A stretch of DNA of 64,000 nt from Ranitomeya imitator (GCF_032444005.1 NC_091291.1:7998001-8062000); one strand, 5' to 3'. Counted from the stretch's first letter, positions 1-33,395 are shown. Numbers and translations: made by a program. The notes: a model not told the origin generated them from the sequence alone.

Positions 1-2497
1 CCACCCATCTGCATGAAGAGAGCGGCCATCGATGCCGCCAGCACCTCTGCCAGCAAGAAGCTCAAAGTTGACTGGTGTGATAAACTGAAAATACCGAACT
101 CGCAGGCGTTAACGCAGGCCGTGATCATGAATTACAACTGCGCATTTGAGAAGACGAGAAACACAAGGTACGTGACCGATGGTAAAGCGTTACACTCCAG
201 AGCTGCACTCACTATTCTTCAGGTTTCAGCTCCTGAATACTTTCAGTTGAGGGTTTGTTACCGTGTATCGGTGCAGGTAATCTCCTCCTGGCTTCACTGA
301 TACACTGTAACGAGTCTTCAGCAGGTTTGAGGTATATTTTGCATTCACTACTGGTTTCTTTTACAGACCAAAGCGTAAGATGAGTGAAGCGTTCGTGCAG
401 GAGATTGTGGACCTGGACTTGGTGGATAATGAAGATCCCTTTATGATCATGAATGGGTGAGTCCTGCTGCTCAGGGTCGGGGTTGTGCTGCCTCGGGGTC
501 GGGTCGGGGCCACTTGTTTGGGTCTGAACTTTTATTTTTTTTCACCATGGTTTAGGCTTCTTCTTGACCTCACTGTGGATGTGAAAACCGAATTTCCAAT
601 GTCAGAATCGGCAAGAGAGTCTCCGGTCTCCGATCACGCGGAAGGTAACGGGGAGTGCGGGGTCCCCAATATCCAGCACCGTCCTCTCCTGTAACTGATA
701 AGTCTGGTTCTGGGAAAGCTGGATGACAGGATAGCTGAGGTCATCTCTCTTAGAAGAGTTGTCGCTGCCACCACTTTGCTGGAGTTATTGGGGGTCTTCT
801 GTCTCCATCTTTACAGATTTCTCCCCCAATTTTGACAACTTTGAGGACCGATTTCTGGAGGAGAAGGAGAAACTGTTAGTGAAGAGAGGCAGCCCGCACC
901 TGCGCTTCGAGATCATCAGCGAGGACGGCTTTTACACCCAGTCCGACAGCGCTGAAGGTACGGGCAGCGATGAGACCACCCATAATGCTGAGCTTAAGGG
1001 GGTCCCCAGCCCAGCCCCCTCTTAGACTTCTTCCGCTGTCCATGGCTGAGCAGTGATCTGCTGACTGTTCTGTAATTTTCAGTCACTGACAACTTCCTCC
1101 ATAAATTGCATTGGTGACACCTGCAGGGAGTTGTCAGACCCCGCGCCCCTCCATAGTTTGAGCTGCTGAATAGAGATGGAGGATTTTGGTTTTCAGATTT
1201 GACTTCTTCCCATTCAGATGCGTGGAGGAGGGTGGTGGAGAAGGTGCAGGAGGCGCGAGGTGTCGGGAGGCTCCGGCAGCTGTCATTCTACGGTGAGAGG
1301 GGGTGGTTGTCAGGCTGGGGTCGCCATCATGGGACCAGCGGTGCCCTTTGTACTGAGCGTTCCTCCTCTAGGTCTGAGCGGATCACGGATGCTGGGAGTT
1401 CAGCACGACGCCGTCCTCTTCCTCCTGGAGCAGCTCATCGGAGCCGAGCGCTGCCGCGGGTACAAATTCCTCTTCCATCCGCAGGAGGTAGAGGAGGAAG
1501 AGCTGCTGATCAACGCGTCTGGGTGCGCGCGGAGCGAGTTCTATGTCCGGTACGTGCAGGCGCCGCTGATCTCCCCCATACTTGGTGCGTTGGTCTATTT
1601 AGATTTTTCTCATTTTATATTTTTTCCGGACAGGAAGAGCACATTTGACATGTTCAATTTCCTGGCGTCGCAGCACCGTAACTTGCCGGAGCTGTATGCA
1701 AACGAGGAAGAGGAGGAAGAGGTGCAGCTGAAGTCCACCAGGTACTAGGATGGCGCCGCTCTGCCGGGAAGGGGGTCACTTGTTTTTGTACGCACACCTT
1801 AACCTTTTGAATGCTGTATTTTCAGACGAGCAACGAGTCTGGATCTCCCCATGGCGATGAGGTTCAGGCACCTGAAGAAAACGTCCAAAGAAGCGGTGGG
1901 GGTCTACAGGTAAGTGGGGGTCCGGCTGTCTGCACCACGCGACCTCGCCGTGTCCTGACAGTCTCCTCCTTCAGGTCCGCCATTCACGGCCGGGGGCTGT
2001 TTTGTAAAAGGAACATCGATGCCGGCGAAATGGTCATTGAGTATTCCGGCAACGTGATCCGCGCCGTCCTGACCGACAAGCGGGAGAAGTACTACGATAG
2101 CAAGGTAAAGCAGCAGCGCCAATATGGCGGCTTTCCTGTTTCCTGTCAATGGAAGCATAAATGTTCACGAACGTCGAGAGGATCGCGGCGGCGGAGACTG
2201 ACCCGCTACCTTCTGTTCCAGGGCATCGGCTGTTACATGTTCCGCATCGATGACTTTGACGTGGTGGACGCCACGATGCACGGGAATGCGGCGAGATTCA
2301 TCAACCACTCGTGCGAGCCCAACTGCTACTCCAGGGTGATCCATGTGGAAGGCCAGAAGCACATCGTCATCTTCGCCCTCCGGAGCATTTACCGCGGCGA
2401 GGAGCTGACCTACGACTACAAGTTCCCCATCGAGGATGCCAGCAGCAAGCTGCACTGTAACTGCGGTGCCAAGAAGTGTCGCCGATTCCTCAACTGA
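1..2497 (+). CDS. KMT2B: Histone-lysine N-methyltransferase 2B, 3' part (FYRC, SET, post-SET); 5'-partial
   Basis: GT-AG exons in frame: <1-167 (tentative), 367-456, 556-644, 817-957, 1218-1292, 1372-1549, 1634-1741, 1826-1909, 1975-2104, 2222-2497. FYRC motif [15 protein letters not shown] motifs [10 protein letters not shown]...[13 protein letters not shown]...EELTYDY, post-[11 protein letters not shown]. Residues SAIHG/YSG/DDFDVVD/VIHVEG and synteny with U2AF1L4/PSENEN favour KMT2B over KMT2A. Confidence 0.93.
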
Positions 2498-4220: not shown

Positions 4221-5306
4221 TGCGGTGTGTACTGTAGGAGGGCTATGGGGGGGTCATACTTAATTTGGCTCAATATTAAGTGATCTGAACATAACTGTAT
4301 ATTGTAATAATACTGAGCAGACTTAATTTTGGCCTTCAGATCAGTCAGTCTCTCATGTGACCCCTTGCCCGCCTCTGCTCTAGAGTATTCTGGAGTCATT
4401 TTTGAACCAATATCCAGAAGACCAAAAAATTCCATTACAAGAAAAAGAAAAATTATCTAAAAAATGTTTAATTTTGATCAAGTAGTTTAAAAGCTGCCCT
4501 AACCTCCCTCTCCCCCAAAGGCTCCTATATAATCGCGGGAATACATGTACCCAAATTCTCAACAATTTTGTGATAAAGCTGTACTCCTGCAGCTAGTAAT
4601 TGCGGTTTCATAATTTAGAAGCTTACAATGTTAGAGTTGGAAGGGACCTCCGGGGTCATCGTGTCCAACCCCCGGATCAATGCAGGAGTCACTAAACCAT
4701 CTCAGACAGATGTCTGTCCAGCCTCCGAAGACTTCCATTGAAGGAGAACTCACCACCTCCGTTCATTGATCACCCTCCTAATACCTAATCTGTATCTTCT
4801 CCCTTTCAGTTTCATTCCTTTTGCTTCTCGTGCTTCCATGTGCAAATCAGGATGATCCCTCTACACTGTGACAGCCCTTCAGATATTTGTAGACGGCTAT
4901 TAAGTCTCCTCTTAGTCGTCTTTTTTTGCAGCTAAATATTCCCAGATCCTTTTACCGTTCCTCATAGGACATACTCTGCCGTCCGTTCACCATCCTGGTC
5001 GCTCTTCTCTGAGCTTGCTCCAGTTTTCAATGTATTTTTTACAATGTGGAGCCCAGAACTGGACCCAGTATCCAGATGAGGCCTGACCAAGGAGGAGTAG
5101 AGGAAGAATTACTTCACGTGATCTACATAGTGGATGCTTTCCTGAAACGGAAAGTACTTGCAAGCAGCATAATACAAAGAATAGCAGGTTTACCCAGAAT
5201 CCTTTGCAGTAGGCGGAGCTATGCAAATCATCTCTTTCCACCCGTCTAATCCACAGCGCTTGGAACCGCCAAGCGTGCAATGCTGCAGATTAGTTTCTAA
5301 ATTTAC

Positions 5307-5386
5307 ACAGCCAACCAATTCCTACCTGTGGACACGTGTTTCGGGCTTTAGGCCCTCATCAGCACAGGGCTGGAATTGGGTGGCTG
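5307..5386 (-). ncRNA. Type I hammerhead ribozyme, mirror copy on the minus strand
   Basis: Reverse complement of the 5497-5577 motif; core at 5325-5368 is identical, with one mismatch in the stem I extension. Confidence 0.9.
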
Positions 5387-5496
5387 TATGAGTGGGGCTC
5401 GGTGAGCAAGCGATACATACATGCTAGCCACCTTTTAAGCCACCTTTTAAGGTGGCTAGCATGTATGTATCGCTTGCTCACCGAGCCCCACTCCAT

Positions 5497-5577
5497 ACAG
5501 CCAACCAATTCCAGCCCTGTGCTGATGAGGGCCTAAAGCCCGAAACACGTGTCCACAGGTAGGAATTGGTTGGCTGT
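5497..5577 (+). ncRNA. Type I hammerhead ribozyme with extended stem I
   Basis: Core CTGATGA 5522-5528; stem II GGGC/GCCC with loop CTAAA; GAAAC 5542-5546; palindromic ACGT loop III; GTC cleavage triplet 5551-5553; stem I CCTGTG/CACAGG; internal loop then a 16-bp extension 5497-5512/5562-5577. Confidence 0.92.
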
Positions 5578-6131
5578 GTAAATTTAGAAACTAATCTGCA
5601 GCATTGCACGCTTGGCGGTTCCAAGCGCTGTGGATTAGACAGGGGTGGAAAGATGATTTGCATAGCTCCGCCTACTGCAAAGGATTCTGGGTAAACCTGC
5701 TATTCTTTGTATTATGCTGCTTGCAAGTACTTTCCGTTTCAGGAAAGCATCCACTATGTATTTCCTTTAAGTAGAGGGCTTTTCGGTCTCTTTTGTCCCG
5801 CTACATTTAGCCCAACTTGGGTCTCTCCCTAAGGTGGCTAGCATGTATGCTTCACGTGATCTAGACTCTATGCTTCTCTTATACATCCTAGAACTGTGTT
5901 TGCCTTATTTGCTGCTGCACCACATTGTTGATTCATGTGCAGTCTGTGATCTATTAGTATATCCAAGTCTTTTTCACACCTGCTGTTGCTTAGTTCTATT
6001 CCTCACAATTTATAGATCTTTTTGTTTTTCTTGCTCAGATATAGCATCTTGCATGTATCCCTGTTAAATACCATTCTATTAGTTGCTGCTTATTGTCTAA
6101 GATTATCTAGATCCTTCCTCTGTCTTCTCTA

Positions 6132-9668: not shown

Positions 9669-12600
9669 TTAGAAGCGGCCGTGTCGGTGCCTCGGTGAGC
9701 GCGAGCGGCGGCGGCCACCAGCATCTCTGTTGTTGTGCCGAGGCCTGTCGGGGAAGCGCTTTGGCGAGTGATGTCTGGGCGGAGATCCGGCCCTGGCCCT
9801 GTAATGGAGAACACGTACAGAGGCGTGAGGTCACGAATTAGGTTATCTGCAACAAATCTCAGAATTATCTGCCGAATCCTGCGACTGGGGAGCAATCCTG
9901 ACCACAGGGTCCAAAGACATCGGCCATCAATAATCCCAGGAGTACGTGCACACTAAGGCATCAGAAGTGAAACACACAAGTTTTTGAGGGGGGACTTGGA
10001 AGAGTTTTTATAAAAAAAACAAAAACAACCCCAAACCTCAGTGTGCACGTAGCCTTAAAGGGGTTGTCTACATCCGCTCGCTCACACATTGACATTAACC
10101 CCTTCCTCATGTGTGACATTACACCCTACGTTCAGTCCTTAGGCATCTGCACTGGGCAATCATTGTGCTGGTATCGCAGGGTGCTGATGGGGGTGGTTGT
10201 TATGGCAGGCGGGGTCCTGGGGATCAGCAGCTGATTACATAAAAGGTGTTACCCCCAAATGTATATTAGTTTTCCAGCCACATGACCTCGGGAGACAACA
10301 GGTGCCAGCCATGACGTGTTGTGTATCTGCCCTGTTGACCAGAATCTGACGTGCGCACGTCCAGGCAGGCGCTTGCCAACACCATCATCAGTGACTCTCA
10401 CCGCCCGATGAATGGAGAGGCACCGGGGAGCCCTCTAAGGGCAGGGAGGAAAATAGACTTTCCCTGCTATGATGTGTCCTTTTAGGGATCTCCCCACAAA
10501 GATGGTCGGGGGACCCCTCGCAGCCAGTGACCGTATATAGGAGCTCCGCTCCCATCTATCCGCAGACGTCCATCACACAGGACGGAGCCTCGGGTCCATC
10601 CAGGTACTCACTGTCGGTTACGGGCTCGGCCGTACAGCTGCCTCCGGAGCGCGCTGGAGATCGGCTTCAAATGCATAAAGTTGCAGAATCCGCCGCGGTT
10701 ACATTCACTGTCGGGGGAGAGAAGGACAAAACGTTACGGGTCAGAACGTCGGAGGTGAAGCAGGAGACTCGAGGAGCTGGCGGCACTCACCCCATCTCAT
10801 ACTGCCGGCAGCAGGACTCCCTGAAGTCTGTGACCGGCGACAGCTCGGCGTGGATCGCCTGCCCGTTGAACCAGCGGTTGTTCAGCTCCACCAGGGCACG
10901 TTCTGCGTCTTCCTCTCGGCGAAACTGTCAGATAAAAAAAAAAAGGGCGAAAGAATCAATGAAGGAGCGAAGTGAGGAACTGTGGGAAATAGAAGAGGTG
11001 GACGAGCGTCACCTCCCCGCCGGCAGCTTAATATAGCCGTGCCTAATCCGGTTTATGGTAAATAGGATTGGACACCGAGATCTGGGGCAGATGGACGAAG
11101 GAGACGCTGGACACAAACAGGTACTGAAGCCCCCGAATACAAATCGCTGATATATAGAATATATAATGCTAGTAGTGGGGGGCACACACATACCGTATAC
11201 ACTGACCAGGGGTGGGGGGCACACTGGACACAGGGAATATACACCCCGACCAGGGGCGGCTACAGGCCTTCAAGGAAACTGACTAGTCCCAGCCCATCAC
11301 TGACACTCAGACCCGCCAACAGGACCCCCCACTATTGCCAGAAGCCGTTATTCCTGTCTACATGCCACCATACATATACATTTCTCTTATACCCACAGGC
11401 TCAATGACACGGACAGAATATCAGTGCGGTGTTCACACTCCACCATTGCCCAACTCCACAGTCAGCATCACAATGGCCGATGCGGAGGGCTGCGACACAG
11501 ACAAAGGAGGCGGCCGGGAAGCTAACGGGCTGCGTTCTGGAATGGGGCAGCCCCCCAAGCAAGTTCTGGTTTTCCTTCCCCGACCCGCCACAGACACCGG
11601 TCGGTACCGAAGCTTTCCCCAGAAGGTGAGAAGCCTAAAATATTACAAAGCGAGAGACCTCAGAAATCCTACAAGATCATAAATGTTAATTGTCTCTCTC
11701 TGCAGCCAGAATGTGTGGTGGCACCAACATGTGCAGCAGAGCCGATAGCACCGCCGGCCTCTCCGCTGACACTCCCAGATATAATGCCACGCAGCGCCTA
11801 CAAACGTCACGTGAGCACTGCCGCCGTCGGACATTCCTACCCGATGCTGCCGCGACAAAGCGTCTGCATATCGGAGGATCTTCCCAAGTACCGCCGATCG
11901 TCCCTGAGAGATGGCGGAGCAGCCAGCGCTCGCTGGTACCCTCAGCAAGCCACCAGTGTGCCCGATATCACCCATGAACCTCGATACATTAACATTCAAC
12001 CACGTGGGTCGTTTTCTGCCCCCCTGACAGGACCCGAGCGACCGGCTAAACAACGGCGTAAGCTGATGGAAGCAGAACTCCACCAAGGCAAGACATCCAC
12101 CCGGCGGGAGCGGCAGAGGTACGTGGCCAAAGATGGCAAGTGCCAGGTCAACTTGGGCCGCATTCACGAAAAGGCTCGTTTCCTATCGGACATTTTCACC
12201 ACGATCGTGGACCTGAAGTACCGCTGGTTCTTGTTCGTCTTCATGATGTGCTACGTCGTCACGTGGCTGCTCTTCGCCACCATCTACTACCTGGACGCGC
12301 TCTTGCGCCAAGATTTGCTCCACCCGGATGACAAGAACTGGGCTCCTTGCTTCCAGAACGTGGACAGCTTCACAGCAGCGCTCCTCTTCTCCGTAGAAAC
12401 CCAGCGCACCATTGGCTACGGCTCCCGAATGGTGACCACCAACTGCCAGGAAGGCGTCTATCTCATAATGGCCCAGTCCATCGTGGGCTCCATGATCGAT
12501 GCCCTCATGGTGGGCTGCATGTTTGTCAAGATCTCGCGACCAAAGAAACGCGCGCAGACGCTGATCTTCAGCCGGAACTGCGTGGTCTGCCCGCGAGATG

Positions 12601-15600
12601 AAAAGCTTTGTCTCATGTTCCGCATCGGCGACCTCCGGGACAGCCACATGGTGGACGCCAAAATAAGGGCCAAGCTCATCAAGTCACGGCAGACGTGCGA
12701 AGGGGAATTCCTTCCTCTGGAGCAGTCAGAGATCAACCTCGGCTACGACACCGGAGAAGACCGACTGTTCCTGGTGGAGCCGCAGGTCATCTGCCACCTG
12801 ATCGACCACCATAGCCCCTTCTGGGAGATGGGGCCGCAGGAGCTGCTTCAGGAGCAATTCGAGATCATCGTCATATTGGAGGGGATCGTGGAGGCCACAG
12901 GCAAGTAGACAACCCCCCTCATGTGTCCCCCAATACAACCCTGCCCTCTGGGGTGTATGCATTATATATAGCGACCCCCCAACATCCAGCTCAGTCTCCA
13001 AACTGGGCAACAACTCGTTTTAACCCTCCCACTAGATCAGAACGGTAACCCCCATTACTGCAGGCAAGTTTATATTCACAGGTTATTGGGGGTGTTATTC
13101 ATATAGACATATTCCTGAAAGATACCACCAACTATGGTTTAAAGGGGTTGTCCGGGGCGACCATTTTGAGGAACCATCCTCCGGATAGGTCATCAATATC
13201 ATACGGGTGGAAGTCTGGTGGTCTGTACACCGTGTTTTCTGTACTGCTGTCGCAGCAACGGGCACTACACAGGGTATGAGATGGTGTTTTTCGAGTATCA
13301 TGTGACCCCTAACAGGAGATTGGTGGGAGCATCTGGTTCCTGACCCCTACTGATCTGATGTGGATGATCCATCACAATAACAGGCCATCAATATCATCCC
13401 CTTTAAATGATCCCAATGTAGATCACCATTGAGATCTCTGAGGGTCAGTTCAGGGGCCCCAGTATTGTAGTTGTACTTTGTTAGGACCCCCCCGTTTCAC
13501 ACGAATCCTTCTCCCTATCCCATCGCAGGGATGACTTGTCAAGCGAAAAGCTCCTACTTGGAAAATGAGATCATCTGGGGCCATCGCTTCGAGCCCTGCA
13601 TGACCCTGGAGAAGGGGGCCTTCCGGGTGGACTACAAGCGCTTCCACAAGACGTTCGAGGTTCAGCTTCCTCGCTGCAGCGCTAAGGAGATGGAGGAGAT
13701 AAAGGAGCTGGAGGGCTCGGAGGTCAGCTTCTACTGGGAGAACGGAGACTTCTTAACCGGCCGCAGACACACGATGACGGACAAGGGCGACGACGAGGAA
13801 GATGAGGAAACCCGGGAGGAACGCAGCGGAAGACTCATCGGAAACATCACCGAAGAGCACAGCTCCGAGTTCAACGGCAGCGACTACAACCTGTGAGTCA
13901 CCCTCCCCAGCGACGAACGCTCGGCGTCAGTAATTACATAGGGTGTAATGAGCGCAGCTCCGCTATAGACCGGGCTGCGCTATGTAGATTGTGAGCAGCA
14001 GAGGACGGAGACACCGCCGCGGACTGCGATATACATGGACTGGTTAGCATCAAAAGGAAAAATAAAGAATATTTTTTAATTAACTCTTAAATTTCTAGCA
14101 GGAGTGCAGTGTAGATCCCGACATCAACATTTGTGCAGCAGAATCTGGGGGTGTCCCATGCCACAGCGCTCACTAGGTCCCTTACTTTTTTTTTGTATTG
14201 GGTCTCCACCGTCCCATTTGCATGCCTAGTCCCCCCTCCAGTCCCTTCCCAAGCAGCAGCGAGACGTTACCTTGACGTAGACGTTTCCCACCAGGTGATC
14301 GCCGAGGTTGTCGCAGATATTCATCTCCTCGATCTCTCCGTATTTCTGCTCCACTTCGGTGAACACTTCCTGCGAGAGTGGAGAAATAATCAGACAAGGT
14401 CACGAAGCTGCAACTCCCCTGGCTTATACAGATAGTCGCTGACCGGACATGCTGGGAGCAGTAGTGTCACCAGCCTTAGATTACATGCACACACAAAGGC
14501 TTTTTCAGGCTGTTCTACTGTGTAACCTGCCTGAAAACGCGCATTAAAAAAAAAAAATGCTAAAAAAAATGGACATGTGCACTGCGACGTAAGAACGGCC
14601 CGCTGCTCATATGTCCAGGCTTCCAGTGAATAAGTGATCGGACCGATGTTCAGGCGGCTTCAGACCCCAATAGTTTATGATTAACACTAGGACTACTGGT
14701 ATAGTGATTTTGACTACTTACTTGCAGTAGTTCTAGTCAGGGTTCACGAGTCCAGTAGTCCTAGTGTTAAAAAACCCAAAACAATGAAAAGTTGCCGGCA
14801 TGCCCACAGGAGTCCTCCTCAGCCATAACTCAGTGGGTATAAAGCCTTAAGAAGGTCCCACTCACCTCAAAGAAGTCATCGTAATGTTCCTGCACCTCCA
14901 CATCACTGACGAGCGCTGCTTAAGAGAGAAGAGATGGAAATCATTGTCACTGCACACAAGGGGACGACACACCCAGAGACTACACAGATGGACGACCATC
15001 ACCGATCTATCCACAGGATAATTAATATTGGGAGACCCCTTTAAGAGTCAGGCCTGCAGAATATAAACTAAGTGACCCCCAGTTAGTGGGGTAGATGCAA
15101 CACTATTCTGCTTGTCCCTCGTAGTCGTGGCTGCAATTGCCCCCTCTACGTCAGCATTATTGGAGCCCACGTGGTCGGTCCCAGCCGCATTGGTTGCTGG
15201 GAGAGGCAATTCTTGTGGCCCCTTTCAGAGCAGGTACATTAGTATTATGATGGCGGGACTCACAGTGGGAGCCGTTGGCGCTCTGTGCCGTGTTCTGCGG
15301 GTTCCGGTAAAGGTTCAAGAGGACGATCGTCTGAAAGACAAAACTAAACAGTCAGCCGAGAAGATGCATTGTGTCTGAAATCACATCCTTATGCCGATGA
15401 GGGGCCAGAATGCCCCCGCTACCTCATCTTAAGGCACTACTTATTAAAGGGGAAGTCTATACACACTATTGCTGGGGTCCTAAAATGAAGCAACCACTGC
15501 GCTGTGTAAGACGCCCGAGCTCCTTTGTTGCTGCTCGGAGCTTTCTGAGTCCTGGGATTGTTCTTCATTCTGACCGACGTCTTCACTGTCGAGGGGGAAT

Positions 15601-18600
15601 CTCAGCTCAAATGTGACCGGATGTTACCAAACAAAGACCCCAAAACTACCACAGATGCCACCCTGCTATATACAGGTCCTTCTCAAAAAATTAGCATATA
15701 GTGTTAAATTTCATTATTTACCATAATGTAATGATTACAATTAAACTTTCATATATTATAGATTCATTATCCACCAACTGAAATTTGTCAGGTCTTTTAT
15801 TGTTTTAATACTGATGATTTTGGAATACAACTCCTGATAACCCAAAAAACCTGTCTCAAAAAATTAGCATATCAAGAAAAGGTTCTCTAAACGACCTATT
15901 ACCCTAATCTTCTGAATCAACTAATTAACTCTAAACACATGCAAAAGATACCTGAGGCTTTTATAAACTCCCTGCCTGGTTCATAACTCAAAACCCCCAT
16001 CATGGGTAAGACTAGCGACCTGACAGATGTCAAGAAGGCCATCATTGACACCCTCAAGCAAGAGGGTAAGACCCAGAAAGAAATTTCTCAACAAATAGGC
16101 TGTTCCCAGAGTGCTGTATCAAGGCACCTCAATGGTAAGTCTGTTGGAAGGAAACAATGTGGCAGAAAACGCTGTACAACGAGAAGAGGAGACCGGACCC
16201 TGAGGAAGATTGTGGAGAAGGAGCGATTCCAGACCTTGGGGAACCTGAGGAAGCAGTGGACTGAGTCTGGTGTGGAAACATCCAGAGCCACCGTGCACAG
16301 GCGTGTGCAGGAAATGGGCTACAGGTGCCGCATTCCCCAGGTAAAGCCACTTTTGAACCATAAACAGCGGCAGAGGCGCCTGACCTGGGCTACAGAGAAG
16401 CAGCACTGGACTGGTGCTAAGTGGTCCCAAGTACTTTTTTCTGATGAAAGCAAATTTTGCATGTCATTCGGAAATCAAGGTGCCAGAGTCTGGAGGAAGA
16501 CTGGGGAGAAGGAAATGCCAAAATGCCTGAAGTCCAGTGTCAAGTACCCACAGTCAGTGATGGTGTGGGGTGCCATGTCAGCTGCTGGTGTTGGTCCACT
16601 GTGTTTCATCAAGGGCAGGGTCAATGCAGCTAGCTATCAGGAGATTTTGGAGCACTTCATGCTTCCATCGGCTGAAATGCTTTATGGAGATGAAGATTTC
16701 ATTTTTCAGCACGACCTGGCACCTGCTCACAGTGCCAAAACCACTGGTAAATGGTTTACTGACCATGGTATTACTGTGCTCAATTGGCCTGCCAACTCTC
16801 CTGACCTGAACCCCATAGAGAATCTGTGGGATATTGTGAAGAGAAAGTTGAGAGACGCAAGACCCAACACTCTGGATGAGCTTAAGGCCGCTATTGAAGC
16901 ATCCTGGGCCTCCATAACATCTCAGCAGTGTCACAGGCTGATTGCCTCCATGCCACGCCGCATTGAAGCAGTCATTTCTGCCAAAGGATTCCCCACCAAG
17001 TATTGAGTGCATAACTGAACATTATTATTTGATGGGTTTTTTGTTTGTTATTAAAAAACACTTTTATTTGATTGGATGGGTGAAATATGCTAATTTATTG
17101 AGACAGGTTTTTTGGGTTATCAGGAGTTGTATGCCAAAATCATCAGTATTAAAACAATAAAAGACCTGACAAATTTCAGTTGGTGGATAATGAATCTATA
17201 ATATATGAAAGTTTAATTGTAATCATTACATTATGGGAAATAATGAAATTTAACACTATATGCTAATTTTTTGAGAAGGACCTGTACAACCCTGACTAAT
17301 ACACTGCTAAGTATGCATGAAAGTGATCACATGATCTCAGCCGCCCCACGATGCACAGAGCGTCCGCAGGTCGTCCGACCTGAACATCACAACCTCAGGA
17401 GGAGACCTGGGACCGATCCGTAATCGGGTGAGTGAGACCGACCTCAGAAGAGCAGAGATTTCTGAATTTTAGAGTTTTTAATTTTAAATGTACTATAGAG
17501 ACACCTATAGAAACCCACCACATATATAGCACCCCCCCCCCCCCAAATTCAGGGGGATTGTCCAGGTATGAGAGCAGGGTCCGCAATCACTGTCAAACCG
17601 GCGGTAACACCAGCCACCGTCACACCGGCAGTCACATGGCGGCACGCCTGCCACCGTCACACCGGCGGTCACATGGCGGCACGCCTGCCACCGTCACACC
17701 GGCGGTCACACGGCGGCACGCTTGCCACCGTCACACCGGCGGTCACACGGCGGCACGCTTGCCACCGTCACACCGGCGGTCACATGGCGGCACGCCTGCC
17801 ACCGTCACACCGGCGGTCACACGGCGGCACGCTTGCCACCGTCACACCGGCGGTCACACGGCGGCACGCTTGCCACCGTCACACCGGCGGTCACACGGCG
17901 GCACGCTGACTGGATGCAATAAATTTCTTTCCAGTCTGTTCTATAGGATGAAGCCAGAGGAGAAATTCACCCAGTAAAGCATTGGACGCCACGATTATGA
18001 CCCCATAATAGTCAGTAGGGTCCATCAGGTGCATCTGTGATATCTGTTGCCTAGGAACAAACACAAAGCCTAATTCCCTGCTGCAGACATGACTGGAGCC
18101 TAAAGCCCCAATGTGGGGGGCCGCATGGTGAGGTCGGGGAGAGAAGGATCAGATGTCTCCAATCTCTGAGTGACGATCCTGCTGCTCTCCAGGAGACAAG
18201 AAATGTCCGTTGTTGGCTCTCGTACAGAACACAGGAGCCGAGCGATCGCTTGACTGCTATCTGCTGTGTATGGGGCCCGCAGGTCACCTCCAGAAGAAAG
18301 TGTGCGGCCCCCAGGGTCCTCACCTGGCTGAAGGTGGGTTTGTTGTGGAGGCGGGAACAGCGGTCTCCGTGGCGACACGCTCCGATCTTGAAGTAAAAGG
18401 AACAGTTGACCCTGAAGAACAGACAAAGGGGAGACGGTTATAAAAAGGCCCAAATATCCAACTAATCCATCACTGGCCACAACACACAGGCGCTCCATAT
18501 ACTGAGTCTTGTCCTGGGCCCCGTGTCATCAGTGGCCTCTCTGTAGCCCACTCCCTCGCTCCTCAGGGGCCCCGTGCCAGCAGTGGCCCCCGTGCAGCTC

Positions 18601-21600
18601 ATTCTTGCCCTCCTCTGGGGTCCCGTGTCCTCAGTGGCCTCTCTGTAGCCCACTCTCTCCCTCCTCAGGGCCCCGTGTCATCAGTGGCCCCTCTGTAGCC
18701 CACTCTCTCCCTCCTCAGGGCCCCGTGTCATCAGTGGCCCCTCTGTAGCCCACTCTCTCCCTTCTCAGGGCCACGTGCCATCAGTGGCCCCTCTGTAGGC
18801 CGCTCTCTCCCTTCTCAGGGCCCCGTGCCATCAGTGGCCCCTCTGTAGGCCGCTCCCTCCCTCCTCCGGGGCCCCGTGTCATCAGTGGCCCCTCTGTAGC
18901 CCACTCTCTCCCTTCTCAGGGCCCCGTGTCATCAGTGGCCCCTCTGTAGCCCACTTTCTCCCTCCTCTGGGGTCCCGTGCCATCAGTGGCCCCTCTGTAG
19001 GCCGCTCCCTCCCTCCTCAGGGGCCCCGTGCCATCAGTGGCCCCTCTGTAGCCCACTCTCTCCCTCCTCTGGGGTCCCGTGTCCTCAGTGGCCCCTCTGT
19101 AGCCCACTCTCTCCCTCCTCCGGGGTCCCGTGTCCTCAGTGGCCCCTCTGTAGCCCACTCTCTCCCTCCTCTGGGGTCCCGTGTCATCAGTGGCCCCTCT
19201 GTAGCCCACTCTCTCCCTCCTCCGGGGCCCCGTGTCCTCAGTGGCCCCTCTGTAGCCCACTCTCTCCCTCCTCCGGGGCCCCGTGTCCTCAGTGGCCCCT
19301 CTGTAGCCCACTCTCTCCCTCCTCTGGGGTCCCGTGTCATCAGTGGCCCCTCTGTAGCCCACTCTCTCCCTCCTCAGGGGTCCCGTGTTCTCAGTGGCCC
19401 CTCTGTAGGCCGCTCCCTCCCTCCTCCGGGGTCCCGTGTCATCAGTGGCCCCTCTGTAGCCCACTCTCTCCCTCCTCAGGGGTCCCGTGTTCTCAGTGGC
19501 CCCTCTGTAGGCCGCTCCCTCCCTCCTCCGGGGCCCCGTGTCATCAGTGGCCCCCGTGCAGCTCATTCTCGCCGCCCTCCGGGCTCCCGTGCACTAAGTG
19601 GCCCCCGTGCAGCTCACTCTCGCCCACAGTGGCCCCTCTGCAGCCCACTCTCGCCCTCCTCTGGGGTCCCGTGTCATCAGTGGCCCCTCTGTAGCCCACT
19701 CTCTCCCTCCTCCGGGGCCCCGTGTCATCAGTGGCCCCTCTGTAGCCCACTCTCTCCCTCCTCAGGGGTCCCGTGTCATCAGTGGCCCCTCTGTAGCCCA
19801 CTCTCTCCCTCCTCAGGGGTCCCGTGTCCTCAGTGGCCCCTCTGTAGCCCACTCTCTCCCTCCTCAGGGGTCCCGTGTCCTCAGTGGCCCCTCTGTAGGC
19901 CGCTCCCTCCCTCCTCAGGGGTCCCGTGTCATCAGTGGCCCCTCTGTAGCCCACTCTCTCCCTCCTCAGGGGTCCCGTGTCATCAGTGGCCCCTCTGTAG
20001 CCCACTCTCTCCCTCCTCTGGGGTCCCGTGTCATCAGTGGCCCCTCTGTAGCCCACTCTCTCCCTCCTCAGGGGTCCCGTGTCATCAGTGGCCCCTCTGT
20101 AGCCCACTCTCTCCCTCCTCAGGGGTCCCTTGTCCTCAGTGGCCCCTCTGTAGCCCACTCTCTCCCTCCTCTGGGGTCCCGTGTCATCAGTGGCCCCTCT
20201 GTAGCCCACTCTCTCCCTCCTCAGGGGTCCCGTGTCATCAGTGGCCCCTCTGTAGCCCACTCTCTCCCTCCTCAGGGGTCCCGTGTCCTCAGTGGCCCCT
20301 CTGTAGCCCACTCTCTCCCTCCTCAGGGGTCCAGTGTCATTAGTGGCCCCTCTGTAGCCCACTCTCTCCCTCCTCAGGGGTCCCGTGTCCTCAGTGGCCC
20401 CTCTGTAGCCCACTCTCTCCCTCCTCAGGGGTCCCGTGTCCTCAGTGGCCCCTCTGTAGGCCGCTCCCTCCCTCCTCAGGGGTCCCGTGTCCTCAGTGGC
20501 CCCTCTGTAGGCCGCTCCCTCCCTCCTCAGGGGTCCCGTGTCCTCAGTGGCTCCTCTGTAGGCCGCTCCCTCCCTCCTCAGTGGCCCCTCTGTAGCCCAC
20601 TCTCTCCCTCCTCAGGGGTCCCGTGTCCTCAGTGGCCCCTCTGTAGGCCGCTCCCTCCCTCCTCAGGGGTCCCGTGTCCTCAGTGGCCCCTCTGTAGGCC
20701 GCTCCCTCCCTCCTCAGGGGTCCCGTGTCCTCAGTGGCCCCTCTGTAGGCCGCTCCCTCCCTCCTCAGGGGTCCCGTGTCCTCAGTGGCCCCTCTGTAGC
20801 CCACTCTCTCCCTTCTCAGGGGTCCCGTGTCCTCAGTGGCCCCTCTGTAGGCCGCTCCCTCCCTCCTCAGGGGTCCCGTGTCATCAGTGGCCCCTCTGTA
20901 GCCCGCTCTCTCCCTGCTCAGGGGTCCCGTGCCATCAGTGGCCCCTCTGTAGCCCACTCTCTCCCTCCTCCGGGGCCCCGTGTTCTCAGTGGCCCCTCTG
21001 TAGCCCACTCTCTCCCTCCTCAGGGGTCCCGTGTTCTCAGTGGCCCCTCTGTAGCCCACTCTCTCCCTCCTCTGGGGTCCCGTGTCATCAGTGGCCCCTC
21101 TGTAGCCCACTCTCTCCCTCCTCTGGGGTCCCGTGTCATCAGTGGCCCCTCTGTAGCCCGCTCTCTCCCTCCTCAGGGGTCCCGTGCCATCAGTGGCCCC
21201 TCTGTAGCCCACTCTCTCCCTCCTCCGGGGCCCCGTGTTCTCAGTGGCCCCTCTGTAGCCCACTCTCTCCCTCCTCAGGGGTCCCGTGTTCTCAGTGGCC
21301 CCTCTGTAGCCCACTCTCTCCCTCCTCAGGGGTCCCGTGTCCTCAGTGGCCCCTCTGTAGGCCGCTCCCTCCCTCCTCCGGGGCCCCGTGTCATCAGTGG
21401 CCCCTCTGTAGGCCGCTCCCTCCCTCCTCCGGGGTCCCGTGTCATCAGTGGCCCCTCTGTAGCCCGCTCTCTCCCTCCTCTGGGGTCCCGTGTCATCAGT
21501 GGCCCCTCTGTAGCCCACTCTCTCCCTCCTCAGGGGTCCCGTGTCATCAGTGGCCCCTCTGTAGCCCACTCTCTCCCTCCTCAGGGGTCCCGTGTCCTCA

Positions 21601-23611
21601 GTGGCCCCTCTGTAGCCCACTCTCTCCCTCCTCAGGGGTCCCGTGTCCTCAGTGGCCCCTCTGTAGGCCGCTCCCTCCCTCCTCAGGGGTCCCGTGTCCT
21701 CAGTGGCCCCTCTGTAGGCCGCTCCCTCCCTCCTCCGGGGCCCCGTGTCATCAGTGGCCCCTCTGTAGCCCACTCTCTCCCTCCTCAGGGGTCCCGTGTC
21801 CTCAGTGGCCCCTCTGTAGGCCGCTCCCTCCCTCCTCAGGGGTCCCGTGTCCTCAGTGGCCCCTCTGTAGCCCACTCTCTCCCTCCTCAGGGGTCCCGTG
21901 CCATCAGTGGCCCCTCTGTAGCCCACTCTCTCCCTCCTCAGGGGTCCCGTGCCATCAGTGGCCCCTCTGTAGCCCACTCTCTCCCTCCTCAGGGGTCCCG
22001 TGTCCTCAGTGGCCCCTCTGTAGGCCGCTCCCTCCCTCCTCAGGGGTCCCGTGTCCTCAGTGGCCCCTCTGTAGCCCACTCTCTCCCTCCTCAGGGGTCC
22101 CGTGCCATCAGTGGCCCCTCTGTAGCCCACTCTCTCCCTCCTCCGGGGCCCCGTGTTCTCAGTGGCCCCTCTGTAGCCCACTCTCTCCCTCCTCAGGGGT
22201 CCCGTGTTCTCAGTGGCCCCTCTGTAGCCCACTCTCTCCCTCCTCAGGGGTCCCGTGTCCTCAGTGGCCCCTCTGTAGGCCGCTCCCTCCCTCCTCCGGG
22301 GCCCCGTGTCATCAGTGGCCCCTCTGTAGGCCGCTCCCTCCCTCCTCCGGGGTCCCGTGTCATCAGTGGCCCCTCTGTAGCCCACTCTCTCCCTCCTCAG
22401 GGGTCCCGTGTCATCAGTGGCCCCTCTGTAGCCCACTCTCTCCCTCCTCTGGGGTCCCGTGTCATCAGTGGCCCCTCTGTAGCCCACTCTCTCCCTCCTC
22501 TGGGGTCCCGTGTCATCAGTGGCCCCTCTGTAGCCCACTCTCTCCCTCCTCAGGGGTCCCGTGTCATCAGTGGCCCCTCTGTAGCCCACTCTCTCCCTCC
22601 TCTGGGGTCCCGTGTCATCAGTGGCCCCTCTGTAGCCCACTCTCTCCCTCCTCAGGGGTCCCGTGTCCTCAGTGGCCCCTCTGTAGCCCACTCTCTCCCT
22701 CCTCAGGGGCCCCGTGTCATCAGTGGCCCCTCTGTAGGCCGCTCCCTCCCTCCTCAGGGGCCCCGTGTCATCAGTGGCCCCTCTGTAGGCCGCTCCCTCC
22801 CTCCTCCGGGGCCCCGTGTCCTCAGTGGCCCCTCTGTAGGCCGCTCCCTCCCTCCTCCGGGGCCCCGTGTCCTCAGTGGCCCCTCTGTAGCCCACTCTCT
22901 CCCTCCTCAGGGGCCCCGTGTCATCAGTGGCCCCTCTGTAGGCCGCTCCCTCCCTCCTCAGGGGTCCCGTGTCCTCAGTGGCCCCTCTGTAGGCCGCTCC
23001 CTCCCTCCTCAGGGGTCCCGTGTCCTCAGTGGCCCCTCTGTAGGCCACTCTCTCCCTCCTCAGGGGTCCCGTGTCCTCAGTGGCCCCTCTGTAGGCCGCT
23101 CTCTCCCTCCTCAGGGGTCCCGTGTCCTCAGTGGCCCCTCTGTAGGCCGCTCCCTCCCTCCTCAGGGGTCCCGTGTCCTCAGTGGCCCCTCTGTAGGCCA
23201 CTCTCTCCCTCCTCAGGGGTCCCGTGTCCTCAGTGGCCCCTCTGTAGGCCGCTCCCTCCCTCCTCAGGGGTCCCGTGTCCTCAGTGGCCCCTCTGTAGCC
23301 CACTCTCTCCCTCCTCAGGGGTCCCGTGTCCTCAGTGGCCCCTCTGTAGCCCACTCTCTCCCTCCTCAGGGGTCCCGTGTCCTCAGTGGCCCCTCTGTAG
23401 GCCGCTCCCTCCCTCCTCCGGGGCCCCGTGTCATCAGTGGCCCCGTGCAGCTCATTCTCGCCCTCCTCCGGGCTCCCGTGCACTAAGTGGCCCCCGTGCA
23501 GCTCACTCTCGCCCCCAGTGGCCCCTCTGCAGCCCACTCTCGCCCTCCTCTGGGGCCCCATGCTTACTTATCCTTCTCAGTCCCGAAAATCGAGGCCAAG
23601 TATTCCGCCAT
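9669..23611 (-). CDS. U2AF1L4: Splicing factor U2AF 26/35-kDa subunit-like, 235 aa
   Basis: Eight exons: 23568-23611, 18324-18411, 15264-15330, 14866-14915, 14271-14369, 10791-10924, 10612-10707, 9669-9798. Translation [33 protein letters not shown]...[15 protein letters not shown]...CCRQYEM...RHGRF. The first six exon sizes (44/88/67/50/99/134) match the U2AF1 family; head-to-head with PSENEN as in human. Confidence 0.93.
11404..13896 (+). CDS. Inward-rectifier K+ channel, Kir3/GIRK-like, nested in U2AF1L4 intron 5
   Basis: Exons 11404-11625 (tentative first coding exon), 11706-12900, 13529-13896. Motifs [28 protein letters not shown] filter, [29 protein letters not shown]|MTCQAKSSY. An intron at ATG|MTCQ is typical of Kir3 genes, whereas Kir2 coding regions are intronless. 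AATAAA at 14061-14066. Confidence 0.9.
13139..13406. mobile_element. T2/Kolobok-type MITE
   Basis: TTAA-AGGGG...CCCCT-TTAA termini. Similar half-ends occur at ~10055, ~15040, ~40470 and ~43140. Confidence 0.6.
14681..14770. mobile_element. Tiny TTAA-flanked MITE (piggyBac-like ends)
   Basis: Perfect 19-bp inverted repeat TTAACACTAGGACTACTGG (14681-14699) / CCAGTAGTCCTAGTGTTAA (14752-14770). Confidence 0.6.
15673..17284 (+). mobile_element. Full-length Tc1 DNA transposon (IR/DR type) in U2AF1L4 intron 2
   Basis: TA target duplication (15671-72, 17285-86). 199-bp TIRs (15673-15871, 17086-17284) with ~3 mismatches, each with inner and outer TCTCAAAAAATTAGCATA direct repeats. Confidence 0.96.
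16002..17006 (+). CDS. Tc1 transposase, 334 aa, DD34E
   Basis: Uninterrupted ORF with an HTH N-terminus, GRKR motif, [16 protein letters not shown] and [11 protein letters not shown]; 34 residues between the second D and E. Confidence 0.95.
   Translation: MGKTSDLTDVKKAIIDTLKQEGKTQKEISQQIGCSQSAVSRHLNGKSVGRKQCGRKRCTTRRGDRTLRKIVEKERFQTLGNLRKQWTESGVETSRATVHRRVQEMGYRCRIPQVKPLLNHKQRQRRLTWATEKQHWTGAKWSQVLFSDESKFCMSFGNQGARVWRKTGEKEMPKCLKSSVKYPQSVMVWGAMSAAGVGPLCFIKGRVNAASYQEILEHFMLPSAEMLYGDEDFIFQHDLAPAHSAKTTGKWFTDHGITVLNWPANSPDLNPIENLWDIVKRKLRDARPNTLDELKAAIEASWASITSQQCHRLIASMPRRIEAVISAKGFPTKY
17600..17906. repeat. GC-rich minisatellite, 37 bp unit, ~8 copies
   Basis: Unit GCCACCGTCACACCGGCGGTCACAYGGCGGCACGCYT. 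Confidence 0.9.
18510..23558. repeat. 51-bp minisatellite (~99 copies) filling U2AF1L4 intron 1
   Basis: Unit CAGTGGCCCCTCTGTAGCCCACTCTCTCCCTCCTCAGGGGTCCCGTGTCCT. It explains the 1397-aa and 1005-aa repetitive ORFs. Confidence 0.95.
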
Positions 23612-31900: not shown

Positions 31901-33395
31901 TGCTGGTGCAGTCACTGTGTACATACATTACTGATCCTGAGTTACATCCTGTATTATACTCCAGAGCTGCACTCACTATTCTGCTGGTGCAGTCACTGTG
32001 CACATACATTACTGATCCTGAGTTACATCCTGTATTATCCTCCAGAGCTGCACTCACTACTCTGCTGGTGCAGTCACTGTGTACATACATTACATTACTG
32101 ATCCTGAGTTACCTCCTGTATTATACCCCAGAGCTGCACTCACTATTCTGCTGGTGCAGTCACTGTGTACATACATTACATTACTGATCCTGAGTTACAT
32201 CCTGTATTATACTCCAGAGCTGCACTCACTATTCTGCTGGTGCAGTCACTGTGTACATACATTACATTACTGATCCTGAGTTACCTCCTGTATTATACCC
32301 CAGAGCTGCACTCACTATTCTGCTGGTGCAGTCACTGTGTACATACATTACTGATCCTGAGTTACATCCTGTATTATACTCCAGAGCTGCACTCACTATT
32401 CTGCTGGTGCAGTCACTGTGTACATACATTACTGATCCTGAGTTACATCCTGTATTATACCCCAGAGCTGCACTCACTATTCTGCTGGTGCAGTCACTGT
32501 GTACATACATTACATTACTGATCCTGAGTTACATCCTGTATTATACCCCAGAGCTGCACTCACTATTCTGCTGGTGCAGTCACTGTGTACATACATTACT
32601 GATCCTGAGTTACCTCCTGTATTATACTCCAGAGCTGCACTCACTATTCTGCTGGTGCAGTCACTGTGTACATACATTACTGATCCTGAGTTACCTCCTG
32701 TATTATACCCCAGAGCTGCACTCACTATTCTGCTGGTGCAGTCACTGTGTACATACATTACATTACTGATCCGGAGTTACATCCTGTATTATTCTCCAGA
32801 GCTGCACTCACTATTCTGCTGGTGCAGTCGCTGTGTACATACATTACTGATCCTGAGTTACCTCCTGTATTATACTCCAGAGCTGCACTCACTATTCTGT
32901 TGGTGCAGTCACTGTGCACATACATTACTGATCCTGAGTTACATCCTGTATTATACTCCAGAGCTGCACTCACTATTCTGCTGGTGCAGTCACTGTATAC
33001 ATACATTACTGATCCTGAGTTACATCCTGTATTATCCTCCAGAGCTGTGCTCACTATTCTGCTGGTGCAGTCATTGTGTACATACATTACATTACTGATC
33101 CTGAGTTACCTCCTGTATTATCCTCCAGAGCTGTGCTCACTATTCTGCTGGTGCAGTCACTGTGTACATACATTACTGATCCTGAGTTACATCCTGTATT
33201 ATACCCCAGAGCTGCACTCACTATTCTGCTGGTGCAGTCACTGTGCACATACATTACATTACTGATCCTGAGTTACATCCTGTATTATACTCCAGAGCTG
33301 CACTCACTATTCTGCTGGTGCAGTCACTGTGTACATACATTACATTACTGATCCTGAGTTACCTCCTGTATTATACTCCAGAGCTGCACTCACTA
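28915..33395 (+). repeat. 86/81-bp satellite array between PSENEN and HSPB6
   Basis: Unit CCAGAGCTGCACTCACTATTCTGCTGGTGCAGTCACTGTGTACATACAT(TACAT)TACTGATCCTGAGTTACATCCTGTATTATACC; about 53 copies. Confidence 0.96.

What the first reader, a model, noticed from the sequence alone, without database searches (positions are those of the whole stretch)
5112..5863. Satellite-2/retrozyme-like element: non-coding, TSD-flanked, carrying an intact extended hammerhead ribozyme
Seen: a 724-bp insert inside a CR1 fossil with a 14-bp TSD. It holds a 382-bp unit (5449-5830) plus 19 nt of terminal redundancy, and a canonical type I hammerhead (CUGAUGA, 4-bp stem II, GAAAC, GUC). Stem I has an internal loop and a 16-bp extension, and loop III is the palindrome ACGU. 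Known: salamander satellite 2 and metazoan non-LTR retrozymes are few-hundred-nt units with type I hammerheads; short palindromic stem III hammerheads cleave as dimers; such units are thought to make monomeric/circular RNA mobilised by Penelope-type RT. Inference: this is a mobile self-cleaving RNA family in a frog, and the terminal redundancy suggests reverse transcription of a circular or multimeric template.
Basis: partly seen in the sequence, partly recalled or inferred. Interest (0 to 1): 0.9.

Follow-up and report, generated by a model that had tools for sequence, protein, structure and literature searches.

The report
Fold-back hammerhead retroelement copy in frog
This is one young, probably inert copy of an abundant non-coding frog retroelement that carries a self-cleaving hammerhead RNA motif; the kind is already described in frogs, and its head-to-head shape points to Penelope-type enzymes having inserted it.

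Summary
A 724-bp insert (5126-5849) splits a CR1 fossil and is flanked by an exact 14-bp duplication. It holds a 382-bp unit plus 19 nt of the next unit, and a complete type I hammerhead that would cut after C5553.

There are therefore two hammerheads on opposite strands, and no two on the same strand.

This layout (a shorter inverted copy head-to-head with a direct copy, an extra "tail" on one arm, a small palindrome at the junction, one duplication) is the published signature of Penelope-like element (PLE) insertions. Public-run contigs show:
- a very abundant family;
- a closed 384-nt cycle, meaning tandem or circular forms;
- uninterrupted CR1 paralogues, which serve as empty sites;
- recurrent family ends at both outer ends seen here.

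Neither arm ends at the ribozyme cut site, so a cleaved linear monomer was not the template. A circular template is not needed to explain the structure.

This copy cannot release a unit-length RNA. A transcript of it would fold into a ~315-bp hairpin.

Frog retrozymes derived from PLE repeats are already published, and this scan has 222 hammerhead notes in the same genome. It is a new member of a known kind, of low to moderate interest.

The parts
5112..5125 (.). Left copy of the 14-bp target-site duplication, CTTCACGTGATCTA. Its last two bases (TA) also match the start of the inverted arm, a 2-nt microhomology.
   Evidence: D3; I1 starts at 5124
5126..5434 (-). Inverted arm: the reverse complement of unit positions 312 to 1. 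Relative to the direct arm it has private changes: C at 5380, a 1-nt deletion and a 2-nt deletion. It keeps the family-consensus AG at 5234-5235.
   Evidence: I1, I2
5308..5380 (-). Second hammerhead, on the minus strand. Its core is identical to the plus-strand copy. It has one C/U mismatch in the helix I extension. The predicted cut lies between 5331 and 5330 on the minus strand.
   Evidence: HH9, 30.2 bits, E 2.4e-5
5426..5451 (.). Inversion junction. AGCCACCTTTTA is repeated 2.2 times, with a 14-nt filler at 5435-5448, forming a small hairpin tip (CCACCTT-TT-AAGGTGG at 5440-5455).
   Evidence: TRF; D4
5449..5830 (+). Direct 382-bp unit. It is non-coding, 48.2% GC, and its RNA is strongly structured (MFE -141 kcal/mol, z -5.0). 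It differs from the family consensus at 5597 (T for C, shared with the inverted arm), at 5794 (T for C), and by lacking AG after 5650.
5497..5577 (+). Type I hammerhead with an extended helix I. Predicted self-cleavage is after C5553.
5761..5849 (+). An 89-nt segment present only on the direct arm: unit positions 313-382 plus the 19-nt redundancy 5831-5849. It corresponds in position to the PLE "tail" lying between two alternative 3' ends. Other family copies end at 5760/5762 and at 5846-5854.
   Evidence: loose ends at 5760, 5762, 5846, 5849; PMC11167929, PMC8557442
5850..5863 (.). Right copy of the 14-bp target-site duplication.
   Evidence: D3; 58 contigs join uninterrupted CR1 sequence directly to 5850
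4874..5111 (-). Host CR1 fossil, ORF2 C-terminal part, downstream of the insertion in CR1 orientation.
5864..5909 (-). Host CR1 fossil, the part upstream of the insertion in CR1 orientation (motif NKANTVLGCIRE). The fossil continues further to the right, but its end was not mapped.

Best explanation
This is one young retro-insertion of a non-coding, hammerhead-bearing family. The family is a metazoan non-LTR retrozyme, that is, a derivative of the terminal repeat (pLTR) of Penelope-like elements (PLEs).

Shown:
- A single 724-bp insertion with a 14-bp duplication sits in a CR1 fossil.
- It consists of an inverted copy of unit positions 1-312 joined head-to-head to a direct copy of positions 1-382 plus 19 nt.
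- Each arm carries an intact type I hammerhead.

Inferred mechanism (about 0.5 for this sub-step):
- A PLE RT/GIY-YIG endonuclease, acting in trans, cut both target strands 14 bp apart.
- Both 3' ends primed cDNA synthesis on the element's RNA at two preferred internal start sites. The bottom strand started at unit position 382+19 and the top strand at position 312, with a 2-nt TA microhomology.
- Both cDNAs ran to the same 5' point, and the two were joined at a small palindrome with a 12-nt stutter.
- The template was longer than one unit and was continuous across the ribozyme cut site, so it was not a cleaved linear monomer.

Consequences for this copy:
- Any transcript holds one sense and one antisense hammerhead.
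- It has only one cut site, which would be buried in a ~315-bp duplex.
- The copy is therefore a dead end, not a source of 382-nt RNA or circles.

Family level (inferred from the literature): tandem copies are transcribed, hammerheads pair through the palindromic helix III and cut, and monomers can be circularised by a host ligase.
For: - Anatomy.
- Both arms share the non-consensus T at 5597, so they come from one source and one event.
- Empty-site paralogues confirm the insertion and the duplication.
- Other family copies end at 5760/5762 (two X12 contigs that run on for 255 unlike letters, plus an X1 joint at 5760) and at 5846-5854 (23 X1 contigs and one X12 contig). These are the same two outer ends as here.
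- A 414-nt X10 contig spans 5448-5849. That is 384 + 30, the length of a closed cycle in a k=31 graph (my reading), so tandem or circular forms exist.
- PLE hallmarks from the literature: an inverted 5' copy adjacent to the direct one, shorter than it; a tail on one end only; palindromes at the inverted junction; a duplication; pLTRs sufficient for mobilisation in trans (PMC3846280, PMC8557442). A PLE protein cuts and extends both strands, and starts RT at two internal RNA sites, in vitro (PMC11167929).
- Frog retrozymes are related to PLE pLTRs (bioRxiv 10.64898/2026.07.22.740005).
- The hammerhead has a complete core. Its 6-bp helix I and 4-bp helix II are the modal geometry of 41 distinct hammerheads sharing the same core, whose helices covary (mean 5.05 contiguous pairs against 1.47 with shuffled partners).
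- The predicted dimer is stabilised by about 10.7 kcal/mol.
- The whole insert folds as one hairpin at -651 kcal/mol.
Against: - No PLE gene or pLTR from this genome could be compared, so homology of the unit to an autonomous PLE is untested.
- The tail here is 89 nt, against the usual 30-40 nt.
- "Unit position 1" is defined by this copy's own junction. That both arms stop there is independent evidence for a defined RNA 5' end only under the two-primer model. Under snap-back self-priming it follows automatically.
- The recurrent ends rest on a few contigs from a truncated list (137 loose ends were not shown).
- A 14-bp duplication also fits LINE endonucleases.
- Ribozyme activity is untested, and most Xenopus retrozyme dimers tested did not cleave.
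- The runs labelled "RNA?" are guesses, so expression is not shown.
Confidence: 0.72

Rival explanations
1. PLE-mediated insertion, but with one primer only. cDNA started at 5849, ran for 401 nt, then its 3' end snapped back on itself at the small palindrome and copied the nascent cDNA for 312 nt. It was then joined to the other target end through the TA microhomology.
For: - There is a palindromic tip and a 12-nt stutter at the junction.
- Self-priming was proposed for PLE inverted repeats that have palindromes at the junction (PMC3846280).
- It explains without further assumptions why both arms stop at the same base.
Against: - The outer end of the inverted arm (unit position 312) would then be arbitrary. 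Yet other family copies end at 5760/5762.
- A PLE protein extends both strands in vitro (PMC11167929).
Confidence: 0.2
2. One reading: a self-cleaved, circularised 382-nt RNA (or a rolling-circle product of it) was the template, and the 19-nt redundancy is RT running past one full turn.
For: - The 19-nt redundancy.
- The closed 384-nt cycle contig.
- circRNA templates are proposed for metazoan retrozymes (PMC7229834).
- The cut site is continuous in both arms, as a religated circle would give.
Against: - A circle has no discontinuity at 5449 where both arms stop.
- The inverted arm and the two recurrent 3' ends are not predicted by this model.
- The cycle contig is equally explained by tandem DNA.
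- HHR cleavage was not needed for PLE insertion in vitro (PMC11167929).
Confidence: 0.12
3. Mobilisation by a LINE (CR1, L1 or L2), with the inverted arm made by classical twin priming.
For: - A 14-bp duplication and 5' inversions with junction microhomology are typical of L1-type insertions (my knowledge).
- LINE fossils are present in the window.
Against: - There is no poly(A), microsatellite or LINE-like 3' end.
- In twin priming the inverted and direct parts are adjacent pieces of one RNA. Here they duplicate the same 312 nt.
- The tail asymmetry and the hammerhead-bearing repeat match PLE architecture.
Confidence: 0.06
4. A fold-back or MITE-like DNA transposon, or an assembly artefact that created a false palindrome.
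For: There are ~315-bp inverted arms flanked by a direct repeat.
Against: - The arms are unequal by 89 nt and differ at four events.
- A 14-bp duplication is atypical for DNA transposons.
- The family also exists as a 384-nt direct cycle.
- The arm end coincides with the duplication through a microhomology.
- Run X1 holds 92% of the unit's sampled 31-mers.
Confidence: 0.03

Closest known systems
Metazoan non-LTR retrozymes (Cervera & de la Pena 2020, PMC7229834; Li, Clavereau & Pollet 2026, bioRxiv 10.64898/2026.07.22.740005)
   Same: - A non-coding unit of a few hundred nt (382), with GC below 50%.
- One canonical type I hammerhead per unit, with 6-bp helix I, 4-bp helix II and a short palindromic helix III that needs a dimer.
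- A duplication longer than 4 bp.
- A structured RNA.
- Found in all seven amphibians sampled, and tied to PLE pLTRs.
   Different: - This locus is not a tandem of at least two units. It has 1.05 direct units plus 0.82 of an inverted unit.
- By the preprint's criterion it is a "monomer derivative", not an active retrozyme.
- None of the primers for the nine Xenopus elements tested there match this unit.
Penelope-like element insertion architecture: pLTR, inverted 5' copy, tail (Arkhipova 2013 PMC3846280; Craig 2021 PMC8557442; Frangieh 2024 PMC11167929)
   Same: - A head-to-head inverted copy that is shorter than the direct one.
- An extension present on one end only.
- A palindrome at the junction and a single duplication.
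- A hammerhead inside the repeat.
- Two alternative 3' ends.
   Different: - There is no RT/GIY-YIG ORF, so only the repeat is present.
- The tail is 89 nt rather than 30-40 nt.
- The hammerhead is the canonical type, not the minimal PLE variant with a long helix II (PMC4209133).
- Homology to a PLE of this genome was not tested.
Salamander satellite 2 and other caudate "extended" hammerhead repeats
   Same: Amphibian repeat of about 330 bp, with a type I hammerhead that has a weak helix III and acts as a dimer (as summarised in PMC7229834).
   Different: - That family forms satellite arrays in Caudata. Here it is a dispersed single insertion in a frog.
- No sequence comparison was possible.
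- An snRNA-type promoter is reported for newt satellite 2 (Coats 1994, cited in PMC2220036). Here only a lone octamer, ATTTGCAT at 5656, was seen.
Rfam Hammerhead_HH9 (RF02275), the conserved intronic hammerhead of amniotes
   Same: It is the best Rfam match. The alignment is end to end and all core positions are kept.
   Different: - The score is 30 bits, against a gathering score of 52.
- Helix III is shorter and helix I has a 16-bp extension.
- It sits in a high-copy repeat, not in a conserved single-copy intronic site.

Membership tests
Hammerhead ribozyme, type I | Conserved core: C3-U4-G5-A6-N7-G8-A9, G12-A13-A14, the A15.1-U16.1 pair, and C17 at the cut site | tested here: met
   CUGAUGA at 5522-5528, GAAA at 5542-5545, GUC at 5551-5553. 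The core is identical on the minus strand.
Hammerhead ribozyme, type I | Three helices around the core, with helix I open (type I topology) | tested here: met
   The fold gives a 6-bp helix I plus a 16-bp extension, and a 4-bp helix II. Helix III is only 2 bp in the monomer and 8 bp in the predicted dimer. The geometry equals the mode of 41 covarying relatives.
Hammerhead ribozyme, type I | Self-cleavage | not testable with these tools
   This needs in vitro transcription. Note that eight of nine Xenopus retrozyme dimers did not cleave (bioRxiv 10.64898/2026.07.22.740005).
Rfam Hammerhead_HH9 / Hammerhead_1 | Score at or above the curated gathering threshold | tested here: not met
   There is no hit at gathering. 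HH9 scores 30.1-30.2 bits against a cut-off of 52.
Metazoan non-LTR retrozyme | Short non-coding unit (about 150-450 bp), low GC, one type I hammerhead per unit | tested here: met
   382 bp, 48.2% GC, no ORF over 66 aa.
Metazoan non-LTR retrozyme | At least two consecutive direct units, each with a complete hammerhead, at the locus (the "active" criterion) | tested here: not met
   TRF finds only the 12-nt junction repeat. There are 1.05 direct units, and the second hammerhead is on the opposite strand.
Metazoan non-LTR retrozyme | Family occurs as tandem arrays and/or unit-length circular RNA | tested here: inconclusive
   A 414-nt contig, equal to 384 + 30, indicates a closed k-mer cycle in run X10. 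The run type is only guessed, and DNA tandems cannot be told from circles.
PLE-type insertion (pLTR architecture) | An inverted copy immediately adjacent to the 5' end of the direct copy, within one duplication | tested here: met
   Compare PMC3846280 and PMC8557442.
PLE-type insertion (pLTR architecture) | A short "tail" on one end only, matching two alternative RT start sites | tested here: inconclusive
   The direct arm has 89 extra nt. Other copies end at both sites. But the length exceeds the usual 30-40 nt, and only a few contigs support the recurrence.
PLE-type insertion (pLTR architecture) | Sequence homology of the repeat to the pLTR of an autonomous PLE (RT plus GIY-YIG) in the same genome | not testable with these tools
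   No PLE with a hammerhead lies in this window. Other windows of the genome cannot be read.
L1-type twin priming | Inverted and direct segments are adjacent, non-overlapping parts of one RNA, with a poly(A) 3' end | tested here: not met
   The arms duplicate the same 312 nt, and there is no A-rich 3' end.

The most novel reading that the evidence does not exclude
The unequal head-to-head arms may be an in vivo footprint of the PLE mechanism so far seen only in vitro: both target strands prime, and RT starts at two internal RNA sites. Here it would be acting in trans on a retrozyme RNA that was linear, uncut at its hammerhead, and had a fixed 5' end. If that holds for the family as a whole, circular RNA is not the retrotransposition template of animal retrozymes, and the hammerhead serves some other step. 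With thousands of young copies bearing duplications, this frog genome could settle the question by a simple census of ends.
Probability: 0.3. Interest if true: 0.55.

Novelty: new member of a known kind. Interest (0 to 1): 0.3.

Why it matters
As a single locus it is ordinary. Hammerhead-bearing repeats are common in frogs, with about 9,000 minimal motifs reported in Xenopus tropicalis in 2014. Retrozymes were found in all amphibians sampled in 2026. This scan already holds 222 hammerhead notes for this genome.

Its value is as a clean, young example, with an exact duplication and about 1% divergence from the family consensus. Its anatomy bears on two open questions: which enzyme mobilises animal retrozymes, and from which RNA form. 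The layout favours PLE machinery and a linear template longer than one unit over a circle.

It is also a reminder that an intact-looking hammerhead in a fold-back copy is not a working ribozyme gene.

Tried and rejected
- Rfam at gathering thresholds gave nothing. Only sub-threshold HH9 hits appeared. The miRNA-family hits at 5387-5496 merely reflect the hairpin tip.
- No other copy of the unit or the hammerhead lies in the window.
- An exact 33-nt core search of metagenome contigs gave 0 hits.
- A degenerate core search gave 45 loci that share only the 32-47-nt ribozyme core and nothing else of the unit. They served only for covariation.
- I tried to fetch more family copies through spurious ORFs of the unit. 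Two exact look-ups and one homologue search found nothing.
- The search of earlier findings by place and by sequence was blank.
- Coats et al. 1994 on the newt satellite 2 promoter is not held. The octamer ATTTGCAT at 5656 therefore stays a lead. It is one of three in the window, where about two are expected by chance.
- By eye, pol III A/B boxes and an snRNA PSE were not convincing, and I dropped them.
- Primers for the nine Xenopus retrozymes tested in the 2026 preprint do not match this unit. The best match is 11 of 23.
- Copy number could not be calibrated from the contig depths.
- Eight of the window's ORFs of at least 120 aa were scanned against Pfam, and none matched an RT or GIY-YIG domain.

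Full report
**What is there**

The 14-mer CTTCACGTGATCTA occurs at 5112-5125 and 5850-5863 and brackets a 724-bp insert, 5126-5849. The flanks, read on the minus strand with the insert removed, give the CR1 ORF2 C-terminal motifs. NKANTVLGCIRE lies at 5874-5909. LVRPHL, QRRATRMV and [17 protein letters not shown] lie between 4874 and 5090. Recognising these as CR1 rests on my own knowledge.

In run X1, 58 contigs that match from 5850 rightwards continue leftwards as uninterrupted CR1 sequence like 5086-5111. Paralogous CR1 copies therefore act as empty sites, and the duplication is real.

Both are exactly as described.
- 5449-5830 is 382 bp, and 5831-5849 repeats its first 19 nt.
- The hammerhead has CUGAUGA at 5522-5528, a 4-bp helix II with loop CUAAA, GAAAC at 5542-5546, loop ACGU, and GUC at 5551-5553.
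- Helix I has 6 bp, a 3x2 internal loop and a perfect 16-bp extension.
- Rfam finds nothing at gathering thresholds. In E-value mode the motif aligns end to end with Hammerhead_HH9 at 30 bits, E 2.5e-5, below the cut-off of 52.
- A loose core pattern is expected 0.2 times in the window. It occurs twice, both times in this insert.

Forty-one distinct hammerheads fetched from metagenome contigs with the same core (CUGAUGA-G...C-GAAACACGUGUC) show the same geometry, a 6-bp helix I and a 4-bp helix II. Their helices covary strongly: 26 different helix I 4-mers, and a mean of 5.05 contiguous pairs against 1.47 with shuffled partners. They share nothing else with the unit.

As a monomer, helix III has only two pairs. 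The predicted dimer forms an 8-bp ACACGUGU helix, at -95.3 against 2 x -42.3 kcal/mol. This is the known behaviour of amphibian and PLE-associated hammerheads (PMC4209133, PMC7229834).

5124-5440 is the reverse complement of 5444-5760 (I1 and I2; one search gives 98% over 314 nt). The insert is therefore made of four pieces:
- an inverted copy of unit positions 312 to 1;
- a 14-nt filler containing a 12-nt stutter, AGCCACCTTTTA x 2.2;
- the direct unit, positions 1-382;
- 19 nt of the next unit.

A second intact hammerhead lies on the minus strand at 5308-5380.

The arms differ by one substitution (5504 A against 5380 C), one 1-nt indel and two 2-nt indels. Both carry T at 5597, where nearly all family contigs have C, so both arms come from one source and one event. 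The inverted arm begins with TA, which is also the end of the duplication, a 2-nt microhomology.

**The family**

The unit's 31-mers are held by 20 runs from 11 studies under six organism codes, many of them very small libraries at a constant share of 0.73. Laid on 5441-5900, run X1 gives 1,818 contigs.

The family consensus differs from the direct arm only at 5597, at 5794, and by an AG after 5650 (which the inverted arm has). The copy is therefore young.

A 414-nt contig in X10 covers 5448-5849. That is 384 + 30, the length a closed cycle takes in a k=31 graph by my reading, so tandem or circular forms exist. The run type is only guessed.

Other copies break off into unrelated sequence at two places. 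One is 5846-5854 (23 contigs in X1; the consensus continues TATCG as the unit does and then scatters). The other is 5760/5762 (two X12 contigs with 255 unlike letters, plus an X1 joint at 5760). These are the same two outer ends that the two arms of this insert have.

**How it most likely arose**

The published signature of Penelope-like element insertions has these parts (PMC3846280, PMC8557442):
- a direct repeat with an adjacent, shorter inverted copy;
- a tail on one end only;
- palindromes at the inverted junction;
- one duplication;
- a hammerhead inside the repeat;
- the repeat alone sufficing for mobilisation in trans.

A purified PLE protein cuts and extends both target strands. It starts reverse transcription at two internal RNA sites whose spacing is the tail. 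Hammerhead cleavage was not needed for insertion in vitro (PMC11167929). The 2026 preprint places frog retrozymes next to PLE pLTRs (bioRxiv 10.64898/2026.07.22.740005).

My reading is that a PLE enzyme acting in trans primed on both strands, 14 bp apart, at unit positions 401 and 312. Both cDNAs ran to one 5' point and were joined at the palindrome.

A variant with one primer and a snap-back of the cDNA is not excluded. It explains the shared inner end automatically. It does not explain why the outer end of the inverted arm falls on a recurrent family end.

One caveat applies throughout: the unit phase (5449) is defined by this copy's own junction. What is independent is that the direct arm is almost exactly one period long, and that its start lies 19-24 nt upstream of the family's 3' end. 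This is the PLE logic of an RNA slightly longer than one unit.

Neither arm ends at the cut site 5553/5554, so a cleaved linear monomer was not the template. A circle is neither needed nor predicted to stop at 5449.

Classical L1 twin priming is unlikely. The arms duplicate the same 312 nt rather than being adjacent pieces of one RNA, and there is no A-rich end.

**What this copy can do**

- It has no ORF over 66 aa.
- The unit RNA alone is strongly structured, z -5.0.
- A transcript of the whole insert folds into one ~315-bp hairpin at -651 kcal/mol, with the hammerhead buried.
- It has a single cut site per strand.

It therefore cannot release a unit-length RNA. By the preprint's criterion (two consecutive direct units with hammerheads) it is a monomer derivative, not an active retrozyme.

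Activity of the motif is untested, and eight of nine Xenopus dimers failed to cleave in vitro. Primers for those nine elements do not match this unit.

**Novelty**

Type I hammerheads in frog repeats, their tie to PLEs, their action as dimers, retrozyme circles in amphibians and the pLTR origin of frog retrozymes are all published (PMC4209133, PMC7229834, bioRxiv 10.64898/2026.07.22.740005). Paired hammerheads on opposite strands 100-700 bp apart were already noted in 2014 (PMC4209133).

This scan holds 222 hammerhead notes and 84 Penelope notes for the same genome. They include fold-back hammerhead insertions with 14-15-bp duplications and head-to-head full-length PLE dimers. Those notes are unchecked leads that agree with my reading.

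The locus is a new member of a known kind. Its modest value is as a clean case for a genome-wide census of ends, which could decide between linear and circular templates.

Noticed in passing
window 18512-23514, 28917-33395, 33962-38817, 43912-49772, 50897-56048, 58879-62063: The window is packed with long minisatellite arrays, with periods of 51, 86, 28, 33, 62 and 86 bp and 37 to 179 copies each. The 86-bp array at 58879-62063 is the reverse complement of the one at 28917-33395. The very long ORFs on both strands in these regions (up to 1,397 aa) are repeat artefacts with only spurious Pfam hits.
   Followed up: partly
window 11715-12908 (+): An ORF with inward-rectifier potassium channel domains: IRK at E 1e-55, and IRK_C covering 114 of the 174 profile positions. 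It is probably an exon of a KCNJ-type gene.
   Followed up: no
window 16002-17006 (+) and 1811-2497 (+): A Tc1/mariner-type transposase ORF (DDE_3 plus HTH_Tnp_Tc3_2) and a separate SET-domain ORF.
   Followed up: no
window 5656-5663 (mirrored at 5221-5228): A perfect octamer ATTTGCAT lies in the unit, 174 nt upstream of the next unit start. Newt satellite 2 is reported to use an snRNA-type promoter (Coats 1994, cited in PMC2220036). Only three octamers occur in the 64 kb, two of them here, but about two are expected by chance.
   Followed up: partly
window 5112-5125 and 5545-5552: The duplication contains the palindrome TCACGTGA. Its CACGTG core is the same hexamer as the palindromic helix III of the hammerhead (ACACGUGU). 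Both outer ends of the insert also lie in an ATGTAT motif (5755-5760 and 5843-5848). These were noticed after the fact and may be chance.
   Followed up: no
runs X4, X5, X8, X17, X20 (organism codes B-F), laid on window 5441-5900: Near-identical unit sequence is held under six organism codes. For example, a 251-nt contig in X20 has no substitutions and two gap positions (the AG insertion after 5650). This could mean close relatives, horizontal spread or cross-contamination, and the coded names do not allow a choice.
   Followed up: no
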